From NCBI RefSeq assembly GCF_000315625.1, contig NW_005434527.1, positions 37,941 to 101,940 of the forward strand: 64,000 nucleotides of DNA, in the 5' to 3' direction. The position numbers and the translations under genes are program-made. Positions 7,821-62,469 of this stretch are shown in pieces; within the stretch, counting starts at the first letter, position 1; each line of letters starts with the position of its first letter. Under the pieces are notes generated by a model. The model worked only from the letters and a program-made list of their open reading frames with translations. It was not told the origin of the DNA and ran no database searches. This stretch comes from Guillardia theta CCMP2712 (Eukaryota > Protista > Cryptophyta).

Positions 7821-10800
7821 TCAGGCGGTTTGTTTGAGAGCCCCCCGTCCTTGTGGCCTGCTAACATCTACAATATGCTCTAAGGATTCACCTCTGTCTT
7901 TCAAATATTGCTGCAACCTGAGTCAGCAGGTAGTGGTCGTATAGAGTCATTCACCTCCAGTTTCGCGATCCCTCGCAGCTGAACTTCTCGATCGGGAGGA
8001 ATGTAAAATTTCTCCACGCATGTGCCTCCTCTTCTCGAGATCTCTGTAACTTGCCACCCCAATCTTTCCAGCGAATCATCAAGAACCTAGGGTTGAGTCA
8101 AGCTGCAAACAGTTCCAGATGAGATCTCACCCTGTTTGGTGCAGAGCAGGTTCTCTTGACATGCCCCGAGCCCCCACAATTATTGCAGAGGTATTTGTTC
8201 TGGACCTTGTAGTACTTGCCTCTGACTCCTTCTCGCCGACACCATTCTCCCTTGGTTCGGTTCTCTGGAGCTTGTTTGACTTTGACCGGCTTGGCATGTT
8301 TTCTTTTCTTTTCTTTTTCTCCAGTCTTCTCCTGCTGAGCACTTCACCCCCACTTGAAGCCTGACCATGCCGGAAGGACCGAGAAGTTTTCTTCTTCTTT
8401 TTCTTTTCGAGTTTGCGTTCTTCTTCCTGGTCAATGACGTCGCTTGCTTGTGAGGTGCAATCGGAAAGCGAGCTGCCTTGCCGCTCTTCTTTCGACAACG
8501 CTGAGTTTGCTTGCGCATGTTCCGCGCTCTTCCAACCTGCGTCTGCAAATGCGTCGGTCACCACGGAAGGGAGCGAGCTTCCCATCAGTTCTTCCGCAGC
8601 CGAAGTTCCTTCGCTCTCGTAGACCGCGCGGACCATCTCGGCTCTGAATTGCTCCAATCTTGAAAGCCCTGGCTGCTTGGGATCCACCTTACGTGGATGG
8701 CAGCTCAAGCTCCGCAGTCGACTAGGCCTCTCGACAACATCTTCGCCGGCATGGTTGGACTTATATTTTGTTGACTGCCCGGAAAATGACTGCACTGCCT
8801 GAGACTTTCTCACCCTCGAGACGGAACTTGAGGGCGTCATGTCGTCACTCTCAAGTTGCAAGTTGTCATTCGTCATCTTCCATTCATCCTCACTCTCCCA
8901 TGTCGATGTTTCCTTCTCCAAAGATGACAAATCTTCGCGAGTCTCTCTGCGCGTGGGCTTGACAGTCAGTCCGAGCTCTTCCAATGCTTTCTTGTTCTGC
9001 TCGATTCTTCGAAATCTGTCTTGCTCATAATTGCATGCTGCTTCTGAATCGCGCTTGTCTGCTTGGTCGTGATCCTGTTCCATCTCGTCGTTACTTACAG
9101 GACTCTTATTGACATTTACTTGAGATTCATTCCCGACCACCTCAGCTTTTCTCGGAGAATTCACGCACATGACCTTGCAAGTGAGTAGAGCGGCCAAGAG
9201 AAAGTTGTTGATAGACATTTGCTGCTGCAATTTGTCCTGTAAGATAGAACAATCATTGCAACGCTTGACAGGTAGGGTTGTCACATTCCGCGAAAAGACA
9301 ACTTTAGCGAACTCATTGTCAAGTAGAAAACGATCGCAAGCTTGGAGAAGAGACTCCACTGAAATAGGTTTGACGACTGAATCAAAATTCGCTTGTTTAA
9401 ATTCATCACATGTGGAACTTGCATTCAAGATAGTTGGCTCATTATTCTTCAAATTTTGTTTTGTGGCATCCAGAGAAGGAGTATTATTTTGTTCTGCTGC
9501 TATATCATCAAGCGTCTTGGTATCCATATCTCTCTGGCTTTTGGTCATTTCGGAATTGCGCTGTGTGACTTTCTGATCCTTTAAGTGGTGATCAGAGCAA
9601 TGAGAATCTTGTGCGCGAAGTACTGGACCAAGACTTTTATCGTCTTCGCTTTCAACGACCATCTTCTGAGTATCAGTCTCCCAGTCAATCATCATACCCT
9701 TCAGCTCAGGCGTCGGAACTTGAGATTTCAAGGTCTCCCTGTTGCAATGCGTTTCAAACTGGAAGCTCTTCGCTTCTCGGCTAACGGAAGAGCTCAAGGC
9801 TGTTGAACTGTTTACTCTCTTCTGCTCACACCGTTCGACGCTTGATACATCATTGCAGCCAACCATGCTCTCGTCGTTATCTGACTCGCTGCTAAAAACA
9901 TAGTCCATGTCGTCAAAGCTGATTTTGCGACTGTGATCAAGTGGTGGTTCAGATCGAAACGACTTCTCGGAGGGAGCTGAGCAAGGACGATTCAACTTTC
10001 CTTTCTGGGAGCTTTGGAGGTCCTTCTTGGGTTCCAGCGATTCTCTTATCTTCCTTACCGGCGTCTTGAGAAACCTGAACGTGGGAGTGAGCATCCATTT
10101 CTCAAATTCTGACTGATCTTGAGGCTTGTCAACTGGAACCCTTCTGGGAGGACTTGTCAGGAAGCTCGTGTGAGGCGTGTCTGTGTTCAAACAAGCGTTT
10201 TCCGGAAGGCTGTTGGCTGTTGCGCTCTCTTCACCTGCAGAGGATGAATCCTTCTGCAAAAACCTTCTGCGGAACGAATGGAAATCGTGATCTTCAGGCC
10301 TTGATTTTTGATTTTTGTTGAAATCTTCCAACTTCAATGTCTTGAGGAGATGATTCCTCATATTTGCCGAAGTCTGTTTCACAATCTCCCGCGCATGTTC
10401 GGGGAATTTTTCAGCGACCTGAGAGACAGCTTGTTTCCCGCAACTGCGCACAGCAACTGAAGGATCATTCAAGGCCTTGACGACCAGACGAGAGATATTC
10501 TCAATGTGAGCAGTCAGCTCCTTGTCACTTCGATTTCTAAGCGTTTGGATAAGGACACTCGCGCAGCAATGCCTTACAACCCCGTGAGATGAGACAAACC
10601 TCCTTTGAGTCTTTTTACCTGAGAGGGAGATGCAAATCTTGAAACCCCCGATCCAGTTCGATCAAGACATTGGCAAGGTTCAAGTAATCAGCTATGGAAT
10701 GAATACAATCCCATGAAGCCGAGGAGATCACTTTGACCTTCAAAACTTGAGCTTAGACAAGACAGTAGATTTGAGTTGTGCACAAGAACTCACTGTCACG

Positions 10801-57720: not shown

Positions 57721-58078
57721 GGTCGGAAATGAACTGACGACTTTGGTGACAGGAATGAGGGCCGGGGAAGAGGATGGGGTAGGGTATAGAACGCGATCCC
57801 GGTGGTAGTTTTTATCTTTGGGGTGGGTAGTCATTGATGTCAATCAGATTGTCAATGGGTACGAATGACCATGTGTCAATAGGAAAATCGAAGTTCAAAA
57901 CTACGGGTCATTGAAAGAACTAGGGGGTAGAAATCGATAAGGGGTCTGAAAGAAGGGGTAGGCACCATCTAGGATGGATCCAGTAGGTAGGGTGGATCAT
58001 TGCAGAGACTGGGTGGGGTGGAAGGACTTGAGGCCAGTGGGATGGACACGTTGGGTCAGCGAGAATGGTGCAGTGAAG

Positions 58079-58088
58079 GAGGAGCAGG

Positions 58089-58183
<95 letters not shown>

Positions 58184-58186
58184 CAG
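58079..58186. repeat. (GGAGCA)n microsatellite
   Basis: ggagcaggagca run. Confidence 0.9.
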
Positions 58187-58631
58187 AAGTGAAGAAAAAT
58201 AATGAGGTGGGCTTACACCTGAAATTCTATTGAGAGAAAGAGTTAAGATGAGGGTCAGTGGAGTATTGCAGTGAATGATTAGATTTGCTATTGCGTATTC
58301 TATGATGGCAGCAGGAAACATACCATTCATGCCAACTTTTTGCTTTAGACCAGAGGGAAACACAAGTTAGTAAGGTAAAATGTGCAGGATGACAGCATAT
58401 ATGTATGAGCGAGCGATGGTCAAGATTGAGGAATCTTATTGGGATAGTGGAGTAAAAGACAGGTGCTGTGGGAACAAAGGAGTGAAATCATACAGGAGAT
58501 GCTTGTTTCATGGAGCATTGAGCGACTGCTGAGCTTCCGCTGCTCATCAACGTTATGAGAAGAACCCAGTGCTCTTTGATGATAGATGATAGCCTTACAT
58601 GAACTCTGACTTGGCCTCTGCTCTACAGAAG

Positions 58632-59641
58632 ATGGTCGCTAGCGCAGGAAGGGCTTTGCATGTGCGCATTCTTCATGCTGCGCTCCTTGTTCAATTGGTG
58701 TCATCGTTTGCCCCTCCAGCTGCCTTCCACAATGGCAAGAGAGCAGCTGCAGCAGTTCGATCACAGCAGGCGACCCGTGGACTTCGGATGGCTGATGGTG
58801 GTAATTTCTTTGGAAACATGTGGGAGAAGGCCGTGCTAAAGGTGATGAGGGTGTAGAAAGCTTGTTTGAGGAGGATCACGTTTATCATAGATTGTGGAAG
58901 TGAAGGAGAAAGACTCTTCGAGGAAGGCTCTTCAGAAGTGCGTCTTCTGTGATAACGGCAACATCAAATGCGATTCTTGCGGCGGGTCAGGCAAGGATGT
59001 CGCTCTTGGGTCGGGTGAGGGACATGGAGGCCTGCGCCTGAGGGCTGAGGGAGCTTGCAGACGAGAAATGCTTTCTCTGTGACGGCAAGGGCGTCACCAT
59101 TTGTGGCATCTGCCTTGGAACCGGCATGGTGGACAGAATCCGGCGAGGGGGAACGGATGTAAGAGGAGAGGGAGAGGGAAGGGGAGAGAAGGGGGGGGAG
59201 GAGGGAGGGGGAGGGGGAGGGGGAGCAGGAGGAGGGACAAGTGGAGGAGGGGGGGGAGGAGGAGGAGGTTTTTATTGTTTTGCAGACCAAGGGGGAATGG
59301 ATCGGCAAGCAGAAGGTCATGGACCCGCTTAGCCCCCAGTATGAGGCCTACGTGCTTGAGCTCGACCCGGCGACCAAGTACGTTTGGTGCCAGGTAACGG
59401 AGGGGAGGAGAGGAAGAGAGACTGGTGCCGCTGACCTCCTCCTCAGTGCGGCGTGAGCACGCGCCAGCCGTTCTGTGATGGTCAGAGCCATCGAGCCTAC
59501 GGGATCAAGCCTGTGGCCTTCACGTCGGAGGGAGAAGCAGGAGGACAGAAGGTCAAGGCCGCACTGTGCGGATGCAAGTACACCAATACGCCACCGTACT
59601 GCGACGGGACTCACGTATCCATGAAGAAGAAGGATGAGTAA
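58632..59641 (+). CDS. plastid-targeted protein: DnaJ-type Cys-rich zinc finger fused to tandem CDGSH 2Fe-2S domains (4 introns)
   Basis: Leader LVSS|FAP; CVFCDNG, CDSCGGSG, CFLCDGKG, CGICLGTG; then WCQCGVSTRQPFCDGQSH and LCGCKYTNTPPYCDGTH; junction gat|gtaag...ttgcag|acc in frame. Confidence 0.85.
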
Positions 59642-59814
59642 GGCGAAAGCTTGCGGCGAGACGAGAGATGAAAGGCGAAAGCTTGCAGCAAGACGGGAGG
59701 GAGGGAGGGAAGTGCGGAAGGATAACATGGCACTGTTTTAAGAGTTAAGAGCTTTACAAAGAATGTACAACATGCAGTCATCTTCAGTCCCTCTTGCTGT
59801 AGCTCGCCAGGCCC

Positions 59815-62469
59815 TCATGCGATGCTCTCCGGTGGCGTCCTGGAACCTTGTTCGTCTGTGCCCATCGAGGAAGTTCGATCCACGTAGGCGAACCCCAGGG
59901 AACCGTAGGGAGGAGGAGGATGAGGCGGAGAGGTCTCCTCCATAGCTCCTGGTAGCATCTCGTCGTCGAGGTCCTCCACGCGGAGGAAGGGGGGAGATCG
60001 AGGAAAGTGATCGTCTCCTACTGGCGTGATACTGAGCGGAATCACGAGGGTGGCAAAGGTTGAAGACTTGCTGCTGCTCAGCTTCCGCAGGTGAACAGGA
60101 GAGGGGACGTCTTCCTCCGTCGTGATGCTGTTCATCCTCCTGCTCGCCATGAAAGCGGTGAAGCCGCAGAGGAAGGTGAAGGCGAGGCCGCCGACAATGC
60201 TGGTGCTGAGGATGAGGCCCAGGTGGTTCTCCGGGACGATGTCTTGGATGTAGAGGGCGACGACGAGGGGGAGGCTGCCGTTGACCGCCTTGAGCTCCTC
60301 GTTGTATGAAGCGACGGAGAGGACGCGCTTGACGAAGGCAGGGTCGTCAGCTCGGAGCGAGACTGTGAAGACGGAGGAGGTTAACTTCTCCTCCACGCGA
60401 CGAGACAGCCCTATGTCCTGCAAGTTGAGTCTGCAGAGGAGGGAGAGAGCCTCCAAGTACTGCCCTGACAAACTCCTCAAGTTGCTGGCGCTTGTCGCCA
60501 CCTCCACGAGCACCCGGAGGTTGTCCCGATCAAGCTTGCTGAGGGGGAAGGCGGCGGGAGGAGCAGGCGTCGAGCTTGTAGTGAGCGGAGGAAAGGAGGG
60601 GCTGGAGGACATGCTCATGTAAGAGGAGAAGTGGAGGGTGTCGGTGTAGGTCAGGTTGCTCCCTTCCACCCGCCCTCCCTCCATCCTCACCCAAGGAGGA
60701 AACTTGGTCTCGTCCTTGTAGTAGACGTGCACTTCATGCCCCGCCGGTACCTGCGAGGGGTCGAACGGCAGAAAGATTCTGACAGGTTTCTGAAATGTCA
60801 GCCCAGGAGGGCCGAAGTCCAGCACAGGCCCAGCAGGGCCGAGGGAGGAGGCCTGGATGCCGAGGTCGAGAGGCTTGTCGAGCTGGAAGACTTTGACGCT
60901 GATGGTCTGGTCCGAGCTGAGAGCCGAGGGAGGGACTTGCACCCCCACACCAGCCGCGCTCCTGACCGCTCCTCCTGCTGTAGCCTGCAGACGGCGAGGA
61001 GGGGGGGAGCTGGCGGCGTCGAAGACAGCGCTCTGGTTGCAGTCGAAGCCGAAGAAACCTTCAGAGCAGACGCACGAACGTGCGACGACGATCCCCCAGC
61101 AGACGAACTCGCAACTATCGCCGAACATACGAGGAGGGCAGCTGGTGACGGGGAGCGTGACGATGGCGGGCAGGGAGGCAAAGTCGTGCTGGATGACCGA
61201 GAAGTTGGCGACTTCCAGGACGCAGTTGGAGCAGGAGACTGAGAGAGCTGAGGAGTTCTGCTGGACGGGAGGGTTCTCGAGGATGAAGGAGAAGAAGAGA
61301 GAGGAGTTGGAAGGGACGTCGTGCAGAACCTTTACCGCGAGCTCCTTGCTGACGTCATCCCACGCCCCCTGCGAGCTGAGATGCTCGCCAGTGACCTGGA
61401 TGGAGGAGGCAGGGGAGTGAAACCCGTGGAAGCCGCTAAAAGTGACCGAGGAGCCGCCGATGAAGCCGAAGTTGGCATGAAGGTTAAGAGTGATGGCGTT
61501 GCTCGCTGTGACGTACTGGATGGAAGAGAACACCTGAAGGGACTCGAACTGGGGCGTCTTGATCAACTGACAGGAGGAGGCCTCCTGGACCACCGAGCAG
61601 TTCCAGAAGGACTCGACGTGACATGTAGCGTCGCATCCATCTCGAGCTCGAGTGTTCCCGTCATCGCACTGCTCTCCGCCCTCGATCACTCCGTCCCCGC
61701 AGACTTCAGCTGCTGCAGTTGGTGTCGTTGAGATCAGTGATGTCTCGGCCGTAGCAGTGCTCACGACGTCCTCTGCTTTCGTAGTCGATGTCTCCTCCGC
61801 TGCTGAAGGAGTGCTGAAAGTCTCGTCCTGCGGTACTGGAGTACTAGAGCTCTCCTTGGCGGCCGCTGCGGGAGTACTCGAGCTCTCTTCTGCCGGTGCT
61901 GGGCTGCTGGACGTCTCCTCCTGCGGTGCTGGAGTACTAGAGCTCTCCTCCTCTGCTGGGGGAGTACTCGAGCTCTCGTCTGCCGGTGCTGGGGTGCTGG
62001 AAGTCTCTTCCGCTGCTGCTGGAGTACTGGAACTGGACGACTCGATGAAGTTGGAGGAGGTAGACTCGATCTGTTGCTCCTGGACTGGAGTACTAGAGCT
62101 CTCCTCCTCTGCTGCTGGAGTACTAGAGCTTTCCTCCTCTGCTGCTGGAGTACTGGAACTGGATGACTCGAGAGAGTCGGAGGAGGTGGAATCAACATTA
62201 CTGATAGGGGTGCTTGATTGGCTTGTCTCTGCGATGATAGATGTAGTCTGAGGGATGGGAGTGCTTGAGCTTGAAGAAACCATTGCATCCTCTATCGAGC
62301 TGGTGGTTGAGGGCATTTGCGGTGTGCTCGAACTTGAAGAAAGTTCTAGAGAAGTTTCGTCGAACTGGGCTGCCGCTGGTTGTGCAAGGAGAAAGAAAAC
62401 GAGGTACAGCACAAGACGTGATCTTGCACGAATGCTTCTTTCACCAAAAAGATGCTCTATCGTCTTCAT
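59815..62469 (-). CDS. type I membrane/cell-surface protein: signal peptide, Ser/Thr/Glu mucin-like repeats, Myxococcus-type Cys repeat, EGF-like, ZU5-like domain, TM
   Basis: 884-aa intronless ORF; AAEEESSSTP repeats, CGDG.IEGGEQCDDGN....DGC...C, CSEGFFGFDC, GPVLDFGPPGLTFQKPV.I.LP, TLHFSSY, LGLILSTSIVGGLAFTFLCGFTAF. Confidence 0.85.
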   Translation of the reverse strand: MKTIEHLFGERSIRARSRLVLYLVFFLLAQPAAAQFDETSLELSSSSSTPQMPSTTSSIEDAMVSSSSSTPIPQTTSIIAETSQSSTPISNVDSTSSDSLESSSSSTPAAEEESSSTPAAEEESSSTPVQEQQIESTSSNFIESSSSSTPAAAEETSSTPAPADESSSTPPAEEESSSTPAPQEETSSSPAPAEESSSTPAAAAKESSSTPVPQDETFSTPSAAEETSTTKAEDVVSTATAETSLISTTPTAAAEVCGDGVIEGGEQCDDGNTRARDGCDATCHVESFWNCSVVQEASSCQLIKTPQFESLQVFSSIQYVTASNAITLNLHANFGFIGGSSVTFSGFHGFHSPASSIQVTGEHLSSQGAWDDVSKELAVKVLHDVPSNSSLFFSFILENPPVQQNSSALSVSCSNCVLEVANFSVIQHDFASLPAIVTLPVTSCPPRMFGDSCEFVCWGIVVARSCVCSEGFFGFDCNQSAVFDAASSPPPRRLQATAGGAVRSAAGVGVQVPPSALSSDQTISVKVFQLDKPLDLGIQASSLGPAGPVLDFGPPGLTFQKPVRIFLPFDPSQVPAGHEVHVYYKDETKFPPWVRMEGGRVEGSNLTYTDTLHFSSYMSMSSSPSFPPLTTSSTPAPPAAFPLSKLDRDNLRVLVEVATSASNLRSLSGQYLEALSLLCRLNLQDIGLSRRVEEKLTSSVFTVSLRADDPAFVKRVLSVASYNEELKAVNGSLPLVVALYIQDIVPENHLGLILSTSIVGGLAFTFLCGFTAFMASRRMNSITTEEDVPSPVHLRKLSSSKSSTFATLVIPLSITPVGDDHFPRSPPFLRVEDLDDEMLPGAMEETSPPHPPPPYGSLGFAYVDRTSSMGTDEQGSRTPPESIA

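What the first reader, a model, noticed from the sequence alone, without database searches (positions are those of the whole stretch)
58632..59641. Plastid protein fusing a DnaJ-type zinc finger to tandem CDGSH (MiNT/CISD3-like) 2Fe-2S domains
Seen: ASAFAP-like leader (LVSS|FAP), four CxxCxGxG-type repeats, then after an in-frame intron two CDGSH motifs, the first with an insertion (CDGQSH). Established: J-less DnaJ zinc-finger proteins such as BSD2 are plastid chaperones/redox factors; tandem-CDGSH proteins are labile 2Fe-2S donors, typically mitochondrial or bacterial. Inference: a chaperone-coupled Fe-S delivery or iron/redox sensing protein of the complex plastid. The fusion is invisible in the ORF track.
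Basis: partly seen in the sequence, partly recalled or inferred. Interest (0 to 1): 0.7.

Follow-up and report, generated by a model that had tools for sequence, protein, structure and literature searches.

The report
Plastid zinc-finger plus tandem CDGSH protein
This cryptophyte alga makes one spliced messenger RNA for a plastid-addressed protein joining a BSD2/DnaJ-type zinc finger to two iron-sulfur (CDGSH) domains; the fusion is shared by other cryptophytes, the public gene model shows only its last third, and its function is untested.

Summary
Exons are 58632-58841, 58891-59014, 59061-59158, 59286-59393 and 59447-59641, giving 244 aa.

The protein has four parts:
- a signal peptide followed by Phe (..VSS|FAPP);
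- a short transit peptide and a conserved helix;
- four CxxC repeats (one degenerate) whose predicted fold resembles BSD2;
- a MiNT/type-6 tandem CDGSH fold (Z 13.6 to 3TBN, 12.8 to human MiNT).

The public Guillardia theta model, XP_005821357.1, has 89 aa and covers only the CDGSH half. Full-length orthologues with the same leader, the same fingers and the same one-residue insertion (CD[G/T]xSH) occur in Hemiselmis, Rhodomonas and Proteomonas and in environmental cryptophyte-like sequences. I found no such fusion outside this set, and no paper describing it.

The finger half is 40-46% identical to a stand-alone finger protein of unnamed, intron-poor eukaryotes. The fusion therefore looks like a lineage-specific gene joining.

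Function is inferred only. The likeliest reading is a stromal carrier of labile 2Fe-2S clusters, or a redox protein, tethered to a partner-binding finger. I class it as a new variant of known kinds, of moderate interest. The scan had not found it on other DNA.

The parts
58599..58601 (+). Upstream in-frame ATG, a possible alternative start that would add 11 residues
   Evidence: ORF list. Transcript contigs X1 and X2 reach upstream of it and X6 starts at 58627. Orthologue signal peptides are 20-25 aa long, which fits 58632 better.
58632..58706 (+). Start codon and signal peptide (25 aa, hydrophobic core ILHAALLVQLVS, ends VSS)
   Evidence: mean Kyte-Doolittle hydropathy 2.0 over 12 aa. Orthologues have equivalent cores.
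58707..58793 (+). Transit-peptide-like stretch starting with Phe (FAPP..): Ala/Arg-rich, no acidic residue before ..RMA
   Evidence: Phe is the first residue after the predicted cleavage site in all five full-length orthologues that have a leader. The rule for stromal import is given in PMC4494062.
58794..58841 (+). Start of the conserved mature protein: GG.FFGN..EKA.LK, a predicted helix
   Evidence: Conserved in the fusions and in the stand-alone finger family. The model has a helix at residues 9-22.
58842..58890 (+). Intron 1 (49 nt, GT..AG, between codons)
   Evidence: Joint seen in X1, X2 and X6. Splice-site bases checked.
58891..59014 (+). Exon 2: finger repeats 1 (CVFCDNG, 58939-58959) and 2 (CDSCGGSG, 58969-58992)
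59015..59060 (+). Intron 2 (46 nt, GT..AG, after the first base of a codon)
   Evidence: Joint seen in X1, X2 and X6.
59061..59158 (+). Exon 3: finger repeats 3 (CFLCDGKG, 59069-59092) and 4 (CGICLGTG, 59102-59125), then the invariant tail VDR.RRGGTD
   Evidence: weak BSD2_CRD and DnaJ_CXXCXGXG matches; invariant columns; BSD2, Z 5.4.
59159..59285 (+). Intron 3 (127 nt, GT..AG, between codons): G-rich low-complexity sequence lying close to the junction of the two modules
   Evidence: Contig pieces abut across 59158 and 59286 in X1, X2 and X6 (table 8). The joints table dropped the row because of the repeat.
59286..59393 (+). Exon 4: short linker, first strands of CDGSH domain 1, and the first Cys of its CxC pair (..YVWCQ)
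   Evidence: aligned to 3TBN and MiNT.
59394..59446 (+). Intron 4 (53 nt, GT..AG, between codons), which splits the first CDGSH motif
   Evidence: Joint seen in X1, X2 and X6.
59447..59641 (+). Exon 5: rest of CDGSH motif 1 with the one-residue insertion (CGVSTRQPFCDGQSH, 59447-59491), canonical motif 2 (59567-59614), and the stop at 59639-59641
   Evidence: (zf-CDGSH, 40.8 bits against a cut-off of 29.5).
59642..59689 (+). 3' UTR, at least this far
   Evidence: Contigs X2 and X6 end at 59678 and 59689.

Best explanation
This is a nuclear gene of the cryptophyte Guillardia theta with five exons. It encodes a soluble protein of about 244 aa that is imported into the plastid stroma. Import uses a signal peptide followed by a transit peptide that begins with Phe. 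The mature protein has two independently folded metal modules joined by a flexible linker. The first is a short conserved helix plus a J-less BSD2/DnaJ-type cysteine-rich domain, with four Cys pairs that most likely hold two zinc ions. The second is a MiNT/type-6 tandem CDGSH fold that most likely holds two 3Cys-1His [2Fe-2S] clusters. I infer that the CDGSH half carries labile, redox-active clusters, as in NEET proteins, and that the finger half docks it on a specific plastid partner or client, as BSD2 docks on RbcL. The gene arose in the cryptophyte lineage when a CDGSH module was joined to the C-terminus of a pre-existing stand-alone finger protein. My odds: one fused protein, over 0.95; stromal location, about 0.8; at least one 2Fe-2S cluster, about 0.8; both sites filled despite the insertion in site 1, about 0.6; the finger acts as a docking or holding module for cluster transfer or redox work, about 0.4.
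For: Shown here.
- Spliced contigs from three studies join all five exons with GT..AG introns (splice bases).
- The five exon translations map contiguously onto P0152, a 191-aa environmental protein that is 92% identical.
- Full-length orthologues at 68-75% identity exist in Hemiselmis tepida, H. andersenii, Rhodomonas lens, Proteomonas sulcata, one further MMETSP transcriptome and a 32-member environmental cluster. All have four Cys pairs and two CDGSH motifs.
- All five orthologues that have a leader place Phe directly after a hydrophobic signal core.
- For the CDGSH half, Pfam gives 40.8-53.5 bits against a cut-off of 29.5. PDB sequence matches are 3TBN at 1.6e-16 and MiNT 6AVJ at 1.9e-12. 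The model has pLDDT of about 95 there. VIA-align gives Z 13.6 at 1.5 A over 80 residues to 3TBN and Z 12.8 to MiNT. The ESM Atlas gives TM 0.92 by the matched bacterial model (0.41 by the whole query) at 1.1 A over 82 residues.
- For the finger half, the model resembles BSD2 at Foldseek probability 0.99 and Z 5.4 over model residues 31-85. A profile of the module matches BSD2 at E 0.006. BSD2_CRD is the Pfam family matched by most relatives.
- The finger half is 39-46% identical over about 100 aa to stand-alone proteins that end just after RRGGTDD..K.K.

From established knowledge.
- An aromatic first residue of the transit peptide directs import into the stroma in cryptophytes (PMC4494062).
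- J-less CXXCXGXG proteins of plastids bind zinc and hold clients (PMC5818400).
Against: - No experiment bears on metal content, localisation or partners.
- The first cluster site has Cys-to-His spacing of four residues instead of three, so it may bind differently or not at all.
- The finger scores below Pfam's cut-offs (16.5 bits against 27; 15.8 against 32.7). Its loop between the two finger halves is about 10 residues shorter than in BSD2, so it is not a BSD2 orthologue and its client is unknown.
- No signal-peptide predictor was available. The cleavage site is read by eye and by hydropathy.
- The start codon is not settled (58599 or 58632).
- Restriction to cryptophytes rests on searches with limited reach.
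Confidence: 0.55

Rival explanations
1. The cysteine-rich domain binds iron rather than zinc. It would then act as a built-in iron chaperone that loads or repairs the neighbouring CDGSH clusters, or passes iron on to the plastid SUF machinery.
For: The Cys-rich domains of the chloroplast J proteins DJA5 and DJA6 are reported to bind iron and donate it for plastid Fe-S assembly (review PMC9407819, citing Zhang et al. 2021). Fusing such a domain to an Fe-S module fits a shared pathway.
Against: DJA5 and DJA6 act through their J domains, and this protein has none. The closest structural match, BSD2, is a zinc protein. Metal identity cannot be read from sequence.
Confidence: 0.15
2. It is a fixed accessory subunit of a large plastid complex, such as a ribosome, a photosystem or an assembly intermediate, and not a mobile cluster donor. 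The finger would serve as its anchor.
For: Among the best structural matches are tandem CDGSH proteins built into Tetrahymena and Perkinsus respiratory complex IV and into the Tetrahymena mitoribosome (Z 11.4-12.0). BSD2-type fingers work bound to an assembly intermediate (6EKC, 8ILM).
Against: No complex is identified. The model shows two modules on a flexible linker and no extended interface.
Confidence: 0.15
3. The finger is redox-active, a thiol-disulfide isomerase like LQY1, CYO1 or ZnJ6, and the CDGSH clusters relay electrons to or from it.
For: Some plastid CXXCXGXG proteins have disulfide isomerase or oxidising activity (PMC5818400; title and abstract of PMC7865324, listed). NEET clusters are redox-active.
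Against: The algal BSD2 counterpart ZnJ2 works independently of its thiols. There is no thioredoxin-type partner motif, and the idea rests on analogy alone.
Confidence: 0.08
4. The protein does not reach the stroma. It stays in the periplastidial compartment or the ER, or is secreted.
For: The cleavage site is not predicted by a trained tool. If cleavage fell elsewhere, Phe would not be the first residue.
Against: In the five full-length orthologues that have a leader, as here, Phe sits right after a small-x-small site that ends the hydrophobic core, and a basic stretch with few or no acidic residues follows. The rule is in PMC4494062.
Confidence: 0.1
5. There are two separate products. The real protein would be the 89-111 aa CDGSH protein of the public models, and the finger would be a separate upstream gene or an untranslated leader.
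For: The NCBI model XP_005821357.1 has 89 aa and starts at MDPLSPQ. One MMETSP ORF has 111 aa and starts at the Met in exon 3.
Against: Three independent contigs carry all five exons in one open frame. Six or more orthologues keep the fusion in frame. The short product would have no targeting signal, while the long one has a conserved leader.
Confidence: 0.03

Closest known systems
MiNT / CISD3 and bacterial 'type 6' tandem CDGSH proteins (PDB 6AVJ, 3TBN)
   Same: One chain carries two CDGSH motifs that fold as a pseudo-dimer. Sequence E-values are 1.6e-16 and 1.9e-12. Structural scores are Z 13.6 and 12.8 at rmsd 1.5-1.7 A. All eight ligand residues are present.
   Different: It has a plastid-type bipartite leader instead of a mitochondrial presequence. 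It carries an N-terminal zinc-finger module. The first site has a one-residue insertion (CDGxSH). In the tree it forms its own supported clade, apart from the three canonical G. theta copies that were included.
BSD2 / ZnJ2 and other J-less DnaJ-type zinc-finger proteins of plastids (PF25436, PF00684; PDB 6EKB)
   Same: It has four CxxCxGxG-type repeats and no J domain, is addressed to the plastid, and has a similar predicted fold (probability 0.99; Z 5.4).
   Different: It scores below the Pfam cut-offs. The central loop is about 10 residues shorter. It has its own invariant tail, VDR.RRGGTD, and a conserved N-terminal helix. It is fused to CDGSH domains. Cryptophytes have red-type Rubisco, for which I know of no role for BSD2 (my own knowledge, not checked here).
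Stand-alone finger family of unnamed intron-poor eukaryotes (P0173, P0176, P0178, P0220-P0235); a lead points to plant 'Protein SPA, chloroplastic'
   Same: It is 39-46% identical over the whole mature finger module, including the helix and the RRGGTD tail. Its leaders, M..(A/S/G)F(V/L), recall transit peptides of red algae and glaucophytes, which start with an aromatic residue (inference; rule).
   Different: These proteins stop about 10-15 residues after RRGGTDD and have no CDGSH module. The source organisms are not known. The link to plant SPA rests only on language-model similarity of 0.90 and weak DUF5351 hits.
At-NEET (chloroplast/mitochondrial single-CDGSH NEET protein of plants; PDB 3S2Q)
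   Same: It is a CDGSH 2Fe-2S protein associated with a plastid.
   Different: At-NEET has one CDGSH domain and works as a homodimer. The match here is weak, Z 3.4. At-NEET has no zinc finger.
DJA5 / DJA6 chloroplast J proteins
   Same: A DnaJ-type Cys-rich domain is tied to plastid Fe-S metabolism (PMC9407819).
   Different: Those are full class-A J proteins that act with Hsp70 and SUF. This protein has no J domain and no C-terminal client-binding domains.

Membership tests
CDGSH / NEET iron-sulfur domain family (Pfam PF09360) | Score above Pfam's gathering cut-off | tested here: met
   Exon 5 alone scores 40.8 bits against 29.5. The 92%-identical P0152 scores 47.7 bits and orthologue P0004 scores 53.5 bits.
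CDGSH / NEET iron-sulfur domain family (Pfam PF09360) | Consensus C-x-C-x2-(S/T)-x3-P-x-C-D-G-(S/A/T)-H in domain 2 | tested here: met
   CGCKYTNTPPYCDGTH at 59567-59614. It is conserved in all orthologues.
CDGSH / NEET iron-sulfur domain family (Pfam PF09360) | The same consensus in domain 1, with three residues between the third Cys and His | tested here: not met
   The motif reads CQCGVSTRQPFCDGQSH. All ligands are present, but one extra residue lies between G and SH. The insertion is kept in every cryptophyte orthologue as CDG[QVNA]SH or CDTVSH. Similar insertions occur in scattered other tandem CDGSH proteins. The model is confident at this site.
MiNT / CISD3-type (tandem CDGSH, monomeric pseudo-dimer) | Two CDGSH domains on one chain folding like 6AVJ and 3TBN | tested here: met
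   Predicted model: Z 13.6 to 3TBN (1.5 A over 80 residues) and Z 12.8 to 6AVJ (1.7 A over 83 residues). Foldseek E-values are 4.9e-8 and 4.1e-7.
MiNT / CISD3-type (tandem CDGSH, monomeric pseudo-dimer) | Mitochondrial matrix location, as an orthologue of animal CISD3 | tested here: not met
   The leader is a signal peptide plus a transit peptide starting with Phe, not a mitochondrial presequence. The tree places the cryptophyte fusions in their own clade, and deeper branches are unresolved.
MiNT / CISD3-type (tandem CDGSH, monomeric pseudo-dimer) | Binds two labile [2Fe-2S] clusters | not testable with these tools
   This needs UV-vis or EPR and metal analysis of recombinant protein.
DnaJ-type cysteine-rich domain / BSD2_CRD (PF00684, PF25436) | Four CxxCxGxG repeats forming two zinc centres | tested here: met
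   There are three canonical repeats and one CxxCxxG. The first repeat is canonical in Rhodomonas and in the stand-alone family. All eight Cys are invariant.
DnaJ-type cysteine-rich domain / BSD2_CRD (PF00684, PF25436) | Score above Pfam's gathering cut-off | tested here: not met
   Exon 3 scores 16.5 bits against 27 for BSD2_CRD and 15.8 against 32.7 for DnaJ_CXXCXGXG. Orthologues score 13.5-14.6 bits. The best relative reaches E 6.2e-7.
DnaJ-type cysteine-rich domain / BSD2_CRD (PF00684, PF25436) | Fold like the solved BSD2 or DnaJ Cys-rich domains | tested here: inconclusive
   Foldseek gives probability 0.99 but E 0.03-0.07 and target TM 0.51-0.55. VIA-align gives Z 5.4 at 3.1 A over 55 residues to 6EKB and Z 2.3 to 1EXK. 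A Z under 8 may reflect only a common arrangement. The model's pLDDT there is 75-86.
DnaJ-type cysteine-rich domain / BSD2_CRD (PF00684, PF25436) | BSD2 orthology (Rubisco large-subunit assembly factor) | not tested
   Only a similarity of E 0.006 and a loop about 10 residues shorter were seen. No reciprocal search or functional test was possible.
Cryptophyte stromal bipartite targeting sequence | N-terminal hydrophobic signal-peptide core with a small-x-small cleavage site | tested here: met
   The core ILHAALLVQLVS has mean hydropathy 2.0, and the site is V-S-S. Orthologue cores score 1.4-3.0. No trained predictor was available.
Cryptophyte stromal bipartite targeting sequence | Aromatic residue as the first residue of the transit-peptide-like part | tested here: met
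   Phe is in that position here and in P0004, P0166, P0167, P0201 and P0169. It is also seen in the environmental form P0213. The rule is in PMC4494062.
Cryptophyte stromal bipartite targeting sequence | Demonstrated import into the stroma | not testable with these tools
   This needs GFP fusions or plastid proteomics.

The most novel reading that the evidence does not exclude
The fusion is a Rosetta-stone clue that J-less DnaJ-type cysteine-rich proteins of plastids, whose clients are mostly unknown, work in iron or Fe-S handling. In cryptophytes the finger would bind iron, or an apo-client, and feed the adjacent MiNT-type clusters. That would make a self-contained iron chaperone plus 2Fe-2S carrier for the red-lineage plastid. 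The stand-alone finger family elsewhere would then partner with a separate plastid CDGSH protein.
Probability: 0.15. Interest if true: 0.75.

Novelty: new variant of a known kind. Interest (0 to 1): 0.5.

Why it matters
Tandem CDGSH (MiNT-type) proteins have been studied as mitochondrial or bacterial proteins, and plastids are known for the single-domain At-NEET. This gene is a plastid-addressed MiNT-type protein kept across cryptophyte genera. It is welded to a member of the poorly understood J-less zinc-finger family.

A conserved fusion is among the stronger sequence-only hints that two modules work in one pathway. It therefore gives a concrete handle on what some of these fingers do, and on how labile 2Fe-2S clusters or iron are handled in red-lineage complex plastids.

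In practical terms, the reference annotation of Guillardia theta is wrong for this gene. It gives 89 aa instead of about 244 aa. Pfam-based architecture listings also miss the finger, so database surveys would not find the fusion.

The naturally tolerated one-residue insertion in the 3Cys-1His site may also interest those who study cluster lability.

Tried and rejected
1. I first misread the donor of intron 3 by one base. That suggested a frame clash, so I considered an alternative donor at 59129 and a two-gene model with a start at the Met of MDPLSPQ. The transcript contigs and a re-reading of the ruler show GT at 59159-59160 and a clean junction between codons. Both alternatives are rejected.

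Every search on the window used single exons by reference. Whole-protein work (Pfam, PDB, folding) used database proteins instead. These were P0152 (92% identical to exons 2-5) and the orthologue P0004.

3. The word search with the 89-aa public protein P0151 returned only cryptophyte fragments. The search with the stand-alone finger P0176 returned 21 unnamed proteins. Neither gave the deeper origin or organism names.

4. The tree of 120 tandem CDGSH modules (80 columns, quick method) supports only the cryptophyte clade (SH-aLRT 95). The source of the CDGSH half is unresolved. It does show that the insertion is not a single-origin marker, with at least four origins.

5. The ESM Atlas searches found no large cluster with both modules, by features or by shape. 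This is not proof of absence.

6. The raw-read RNA run X18 laid only 7 reads. That is too few to give strand, ends or expression level.

7. Six literature searches found no paper on a CDGSH-finger fusion or on plastid CDGSH proteins of cryptophytes. A term search of the CDGSH phylogeny paper PMC5859297 found no mention of DnaJ, fusion, algae or chloroplast.

8. Model coordinates are not exposed, so I could not measure ligand geometry at the inserted site.

Full report
**What is in the sequence**

The + strand between 58632 and 59641 holds five coding pieces.
- Piece 1 starts with ATG at 58632. It reads as a leader with a hydrophobic core, then ..VSS followed by FAPP.., an Ala/Arg-rich stretch and GGNFFGNMWEKAVLK.
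- Pieces 2 and 3 carry four cysteine pairs: CVFCDNG, CDSCGGSG, CFLCDGKG and CGICLGTG. They are followed by MVDRIRRGGTD.
- Pieces 4 and 5 carry two CDGSH motifs. The first is CQ|CGVSTRQPFCDGQSH, with one extra residue before SH. The second is the canonical CGCKYTNTPPYCDGTH.

In Pfam, exon 5 alone matches zf-CDGSH at E 2.6e-10 (40.8 bits against a cut-off of 29.5). Exon 3 gives weak matches to BSD2_CRD and DnaJ_CXXCXGXG.

**Gene model**

One search for sequencing runs and one laying of reads settle the gene model. Contigs from three runs in three different studies (X1, X2, X6) each carry the same five blocks joined end to end: 58300/58494/58627-58841, 58891-59014, 59061-59158, 59286-59393 and 59447-59629/59678/59689. 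There are no mismatches.

The four skipped stretches are 58842-58890 (49 nt), 59015-59060 (46 nt), 59159-59285 (127 nt) and 59394-59446 (53 nt). All begin with GT and end with AG on the + strand. This shows that the contigs come from spliced RNA of this strand.

Its row was dropped from the joints table because the intron is a G-rich repeat, but table 8 shows the contig positions abutting across it.

I had at first misread the ruler by one base and suspected a frame clash. That suspicion and the two-gene alternative are withdrawn.

The coding sequence is 210+124+98+108+195 nt, which gives 244 codons plus the stop. An in-frame ATG at 58599 would add 11 residues. Orthologue signal peptides of 20-25 residues fit 58632 better, but the 5' end is not mapped.

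**The joined query was not made**

Each exon was searched by reference. For whole-protein analyses I used database proteins.

The stand-in, P0152, is a 191-aa environmental protein. The exon translations map onto it contiguously, at residues 1-18, 19-59, 61-92, 93-128 and 129-190, with 92% identity over exons 2-5. This independently reproduces the splice pattern.

**Organism and public annotation**

I confirmed this. The 89-aa protein identical to the end of this gene is XP_005821357.1/EKX34377.1, 'hypothetical protein GUITHDRAFT_80584 [Guillardia theta CCMP2712]'.

That public model starts at MDPLSPQ in exon 4. It therefore lacks the leader and the whole finger module. An MMETSP ORF of 111 aa starts at the Met in exon 3. 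The fusion is thus hidden both in the ORF list and in the reference annotation.

**Relatives**

An exhaustive HMMER search with exon 5 gave 879 hits. The top ones are this gene, then proteins of 240-249 aa with the match at their C-terminus.

Using one of these as query (Hemiselmis tepida, P0004), the word search found full-length proteins of the same build:
- H. andersenii;
- Rhodomonas lens;
- Proteomonas sulcata;
- a further MMETSP transcriptome;
- an environmental cluster of 32 members.

A fragment from Hanusia phi also turned up.

All eight finger cysteines, the VDR.RRGGTD tail, MDP..PQ, WCQCGVS and both CDGSH motifs are conserved. The one-residue insertion in site 1 is kept in every one, as CDG[QVNA]SH or CDTVSH.

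Beyond these, hits are bacterial CDGSH proteins fused to cupin or YjdI domains. Neither that search nor the two ESM Atlas searches showed a finger-CDGSH fusion elsewhere. These searches have limited reach, so restriction to cryptophytes is likely but not proven.

**The finger half**

The finger half also matches a set of stand-alone proteins of 130-200 aa, at 39-46% identity over about 100 residues. They share the N-terminal helix motif (G.FG.L....L...V), all four Cys pairs and the RRGGTD tail, and they end 10-15 residues later.

They sit on intron-poor eukaryotic contigs next to ordinary nuclear genes such as TAF8, RRP7 and a ribosomal protein. Their organisms are not named.

Their leaders, such as MAFV.. 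and M..LSFV.., recall the aromatic-first transit peptides of red algae and glaucophytes (rule in PMC4494062). That is an inference only.

G. theta has no separate copy of this finger gene. The simplest history is that a CDGSH module was added to the C-terminus of a pre-existing plastid finger protein in the cryptophyte lineage.

A language-model lead links the stand-alone family to plant 'Protein SPA, chloroplastic' (score 0.90). Only weak DUF5351 hits support this.

**The CDGSH half**

G. theta has four other tandem CDGSH loci and one single-domain locus. The four tandem loci have the canonical first motif, or in one copy a degenerate one.

In a tree of 120 tandem modules, the cryptophyte fusion halves form their own clade (SH-aLRT 95), apart from the three canonical G. 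theta copies that were included. Deeper branches are unresolved.

Insertions of the CDGxSH type occur in scattered other proteins, for example one from the fungus Syncephalis fuscata. Supported branches force at least four origins. The position therefore tolerates an extra residue, and the insertion does not mark one family.

**Structure**

An AlphaFold2 model of P0152, built with a 118-row alignment, has mean pLDDT 78.6. The value is about 95 over the CDGSH half and 75-86 over the finger. The linkers are of low confidence (residues 18-29 and 87-105), and pTM is 0.51. This describes two modules on a flexible tether.

Matches of the CDGSH half (residues 102-191):

| Target | Z | rmsd and aligned length |
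|---|---|---|
| 3TBN, type 6 CDGSH | 13.6 | 1.5 A over 80 residues |
| Human MiNT, 6AVJ | 12.8 | 1.7 A over 83 residues |
| CDGSH subunits of Tetrahymena and Perkinsus complex IV and the Tetrahymena mitoribosome | 11.4-12.0 | not quoted |

The finger (residues 31-85) matches Arabidopsis BSD2 with Foldseek probability 0.99 and Z 5.4, and E. coli DnaJ's cysteine-rich domain only weakly. A profile of the finger module matches BSD2 at E 0.006, with a loop about 10 residues shorter.

I therefore file the finger in the DnaJ/BSD2-type superfamily. I do not call it a BSD2 orthologue, and it fails Pfam's cut-offs.

**Targeting**

The first 25 residues have a hydrophobic core with mean hydropathy 2.0 and end V-S-S. 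Phe follows. Then come 28 residues with four basic and no acidic residues.

In the five orthologues that have a leader, Phe likewise follows directly after the core: ALG|F, ALG|F, TDA|F, AQA|F and SSG|F. The environmental form has ACA|F.

In cryptophytes and diatoms, an aromatic first residue of the transit-peptide-like part sends the protein into the stroma. Without it, the protein stays in the periplastidial compartment (PMC4494062).

No second hydrophobic stretch suggests thylakoid-lumen sorting. Localisation is therefore inferred, with good comparative support.

**How it probably works**

Shown: it is one mRNA and one conserved open frame, with two metal-binding modules of known fold classes, a complete set of ligands and a conserved stromal-type leader.

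Inferred: the CDGSH half holds two 3Cys-1His [2Fe-2S] clusters. Such clusters are labile and redox-active in NEET proteins. The finger holds two zinc ions and binds a partner or client, as BSD2 and ZnJ2 do (PMC5818400).

The most economical mechanism is a stromal 2Fe-2S carrier, donor or redox sensor, tethered by a flexible linker to a docking or holding module.

Four rivals remain open:
- The finger binds iron, as reported for the Cys-rich domains of DJA5 and DJA6, which donate iron to plastid Fe-S assembly (PMC9407819).
- The protein is a fixed subunit of a plastid complex, as tandem CDGSH proteins are in alveolate mitochondria.
- The finger is a redox-active disulfide isomerase.
- The protein is located outside the stroma.

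The two-gene reading is effectively excluded.

**Novelty and score**

Both modules are well known, and full-length orthologues already sit in public protein sets, labelled only as CDGSH proteins. Six literature searches found no description of this architecture or of plastid CDGSH proteins in cryptophytes. A term search of the main CDGSH phylogeny paper found no mention of DnaJ, fusion, algae or chloroplast.

I rate it a new variant of known kinds: a conserved, lineage-specific fusion that is mis-annotated in the reference genome. Interest is moderate at 0.5, because the fusion offers a testable link between J-less zinc fingers and plastid Fe-S handling, but no function is shown.

Noticed in passing
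window 59815-62469, minus strand: An uninterrupted 884-aa ORF lies convergent to this gene. It has a Ser/Thr/Pro-rich repeated N-terminal part (SSSSTP..), a DUF4215 cysteine-rich repeat (E 3.1e-7), a ZU5 domain (E 6.9e-8) and a hydrophobic stretch near the C-terminus. Its stop lies only about 125-175 nt from the end of this gene's transcript contigs, so the 3' UTRs may overlap.
   Followed up: partly
window 57974-58363, both strands: A long trinucleotide low-complexity tract gives poly-Leu, (EQ)n and (GA)n ORFs on both strands just upstream of the gene. Transcript contig X1 runs through to 58300 and 142 nt beyond. Either the 5' UTR is long and holds several upstream ATGs, or a neighbouring transcript overlaps.
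   Followed up: no
window 59159-59285: Intron 3 is almost pure G/A (GGGAGG-type repeats) and is the longest of the four. It lies close to the junction between the finger module and the CDGSH module. The reads tool skipped it as a repeat.
   Followed up: partly
G000:C1:1414578-1414772 and C1:1422265-1422462 (L003, L005); also C160:58494-58688 (L002) and C128:29945-30136 (L001): G. theta has four more tandem CDGSH loci with canonical first motifs. Two nearly identical copies lie 7.7 kb apart on contig C1, and one of them reads CDGSL (His ligand replaced by Leu) in its first motif, so it may be a decaying copy. A single-domain locus is at C55:51181-51264.
   Followed up: partly
P0170, P0203, P0204, P0210 (environmental cryptophyte-like contigs): Gene callers read through an intron that sits at a different place in the first CDGSH motif (between ..MKQ and PFCDG) than in G. 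theta (between WCQ and CG). Intron positions inside this motif therefore differ between cryptophytes.
   Followed up: no
L012 8001-8426 with 8767-9450; L015 8001-8399 with 8718-9434: In two different unnamed intron-poor eukaryotes, the stand-alone finger gene is followed by a short-chain dehydrogenase gene (adh_short) on the opposite strand, a conserved neighbourhood. L012 also has a Rieske-domain gene 3 kb further on.
   Followed up: no
P0001 (MMETSP Transcript_35787 ORF, 111 aa): This ORF, called from a G. theta transcriptome assembly, starts at the Met in exon 3. That would be expected if the assembled transcript kept intron 2, which has an in-frame stop, or was truncated. It may point to an unspliced or alternative isoform.
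   Followed up: no
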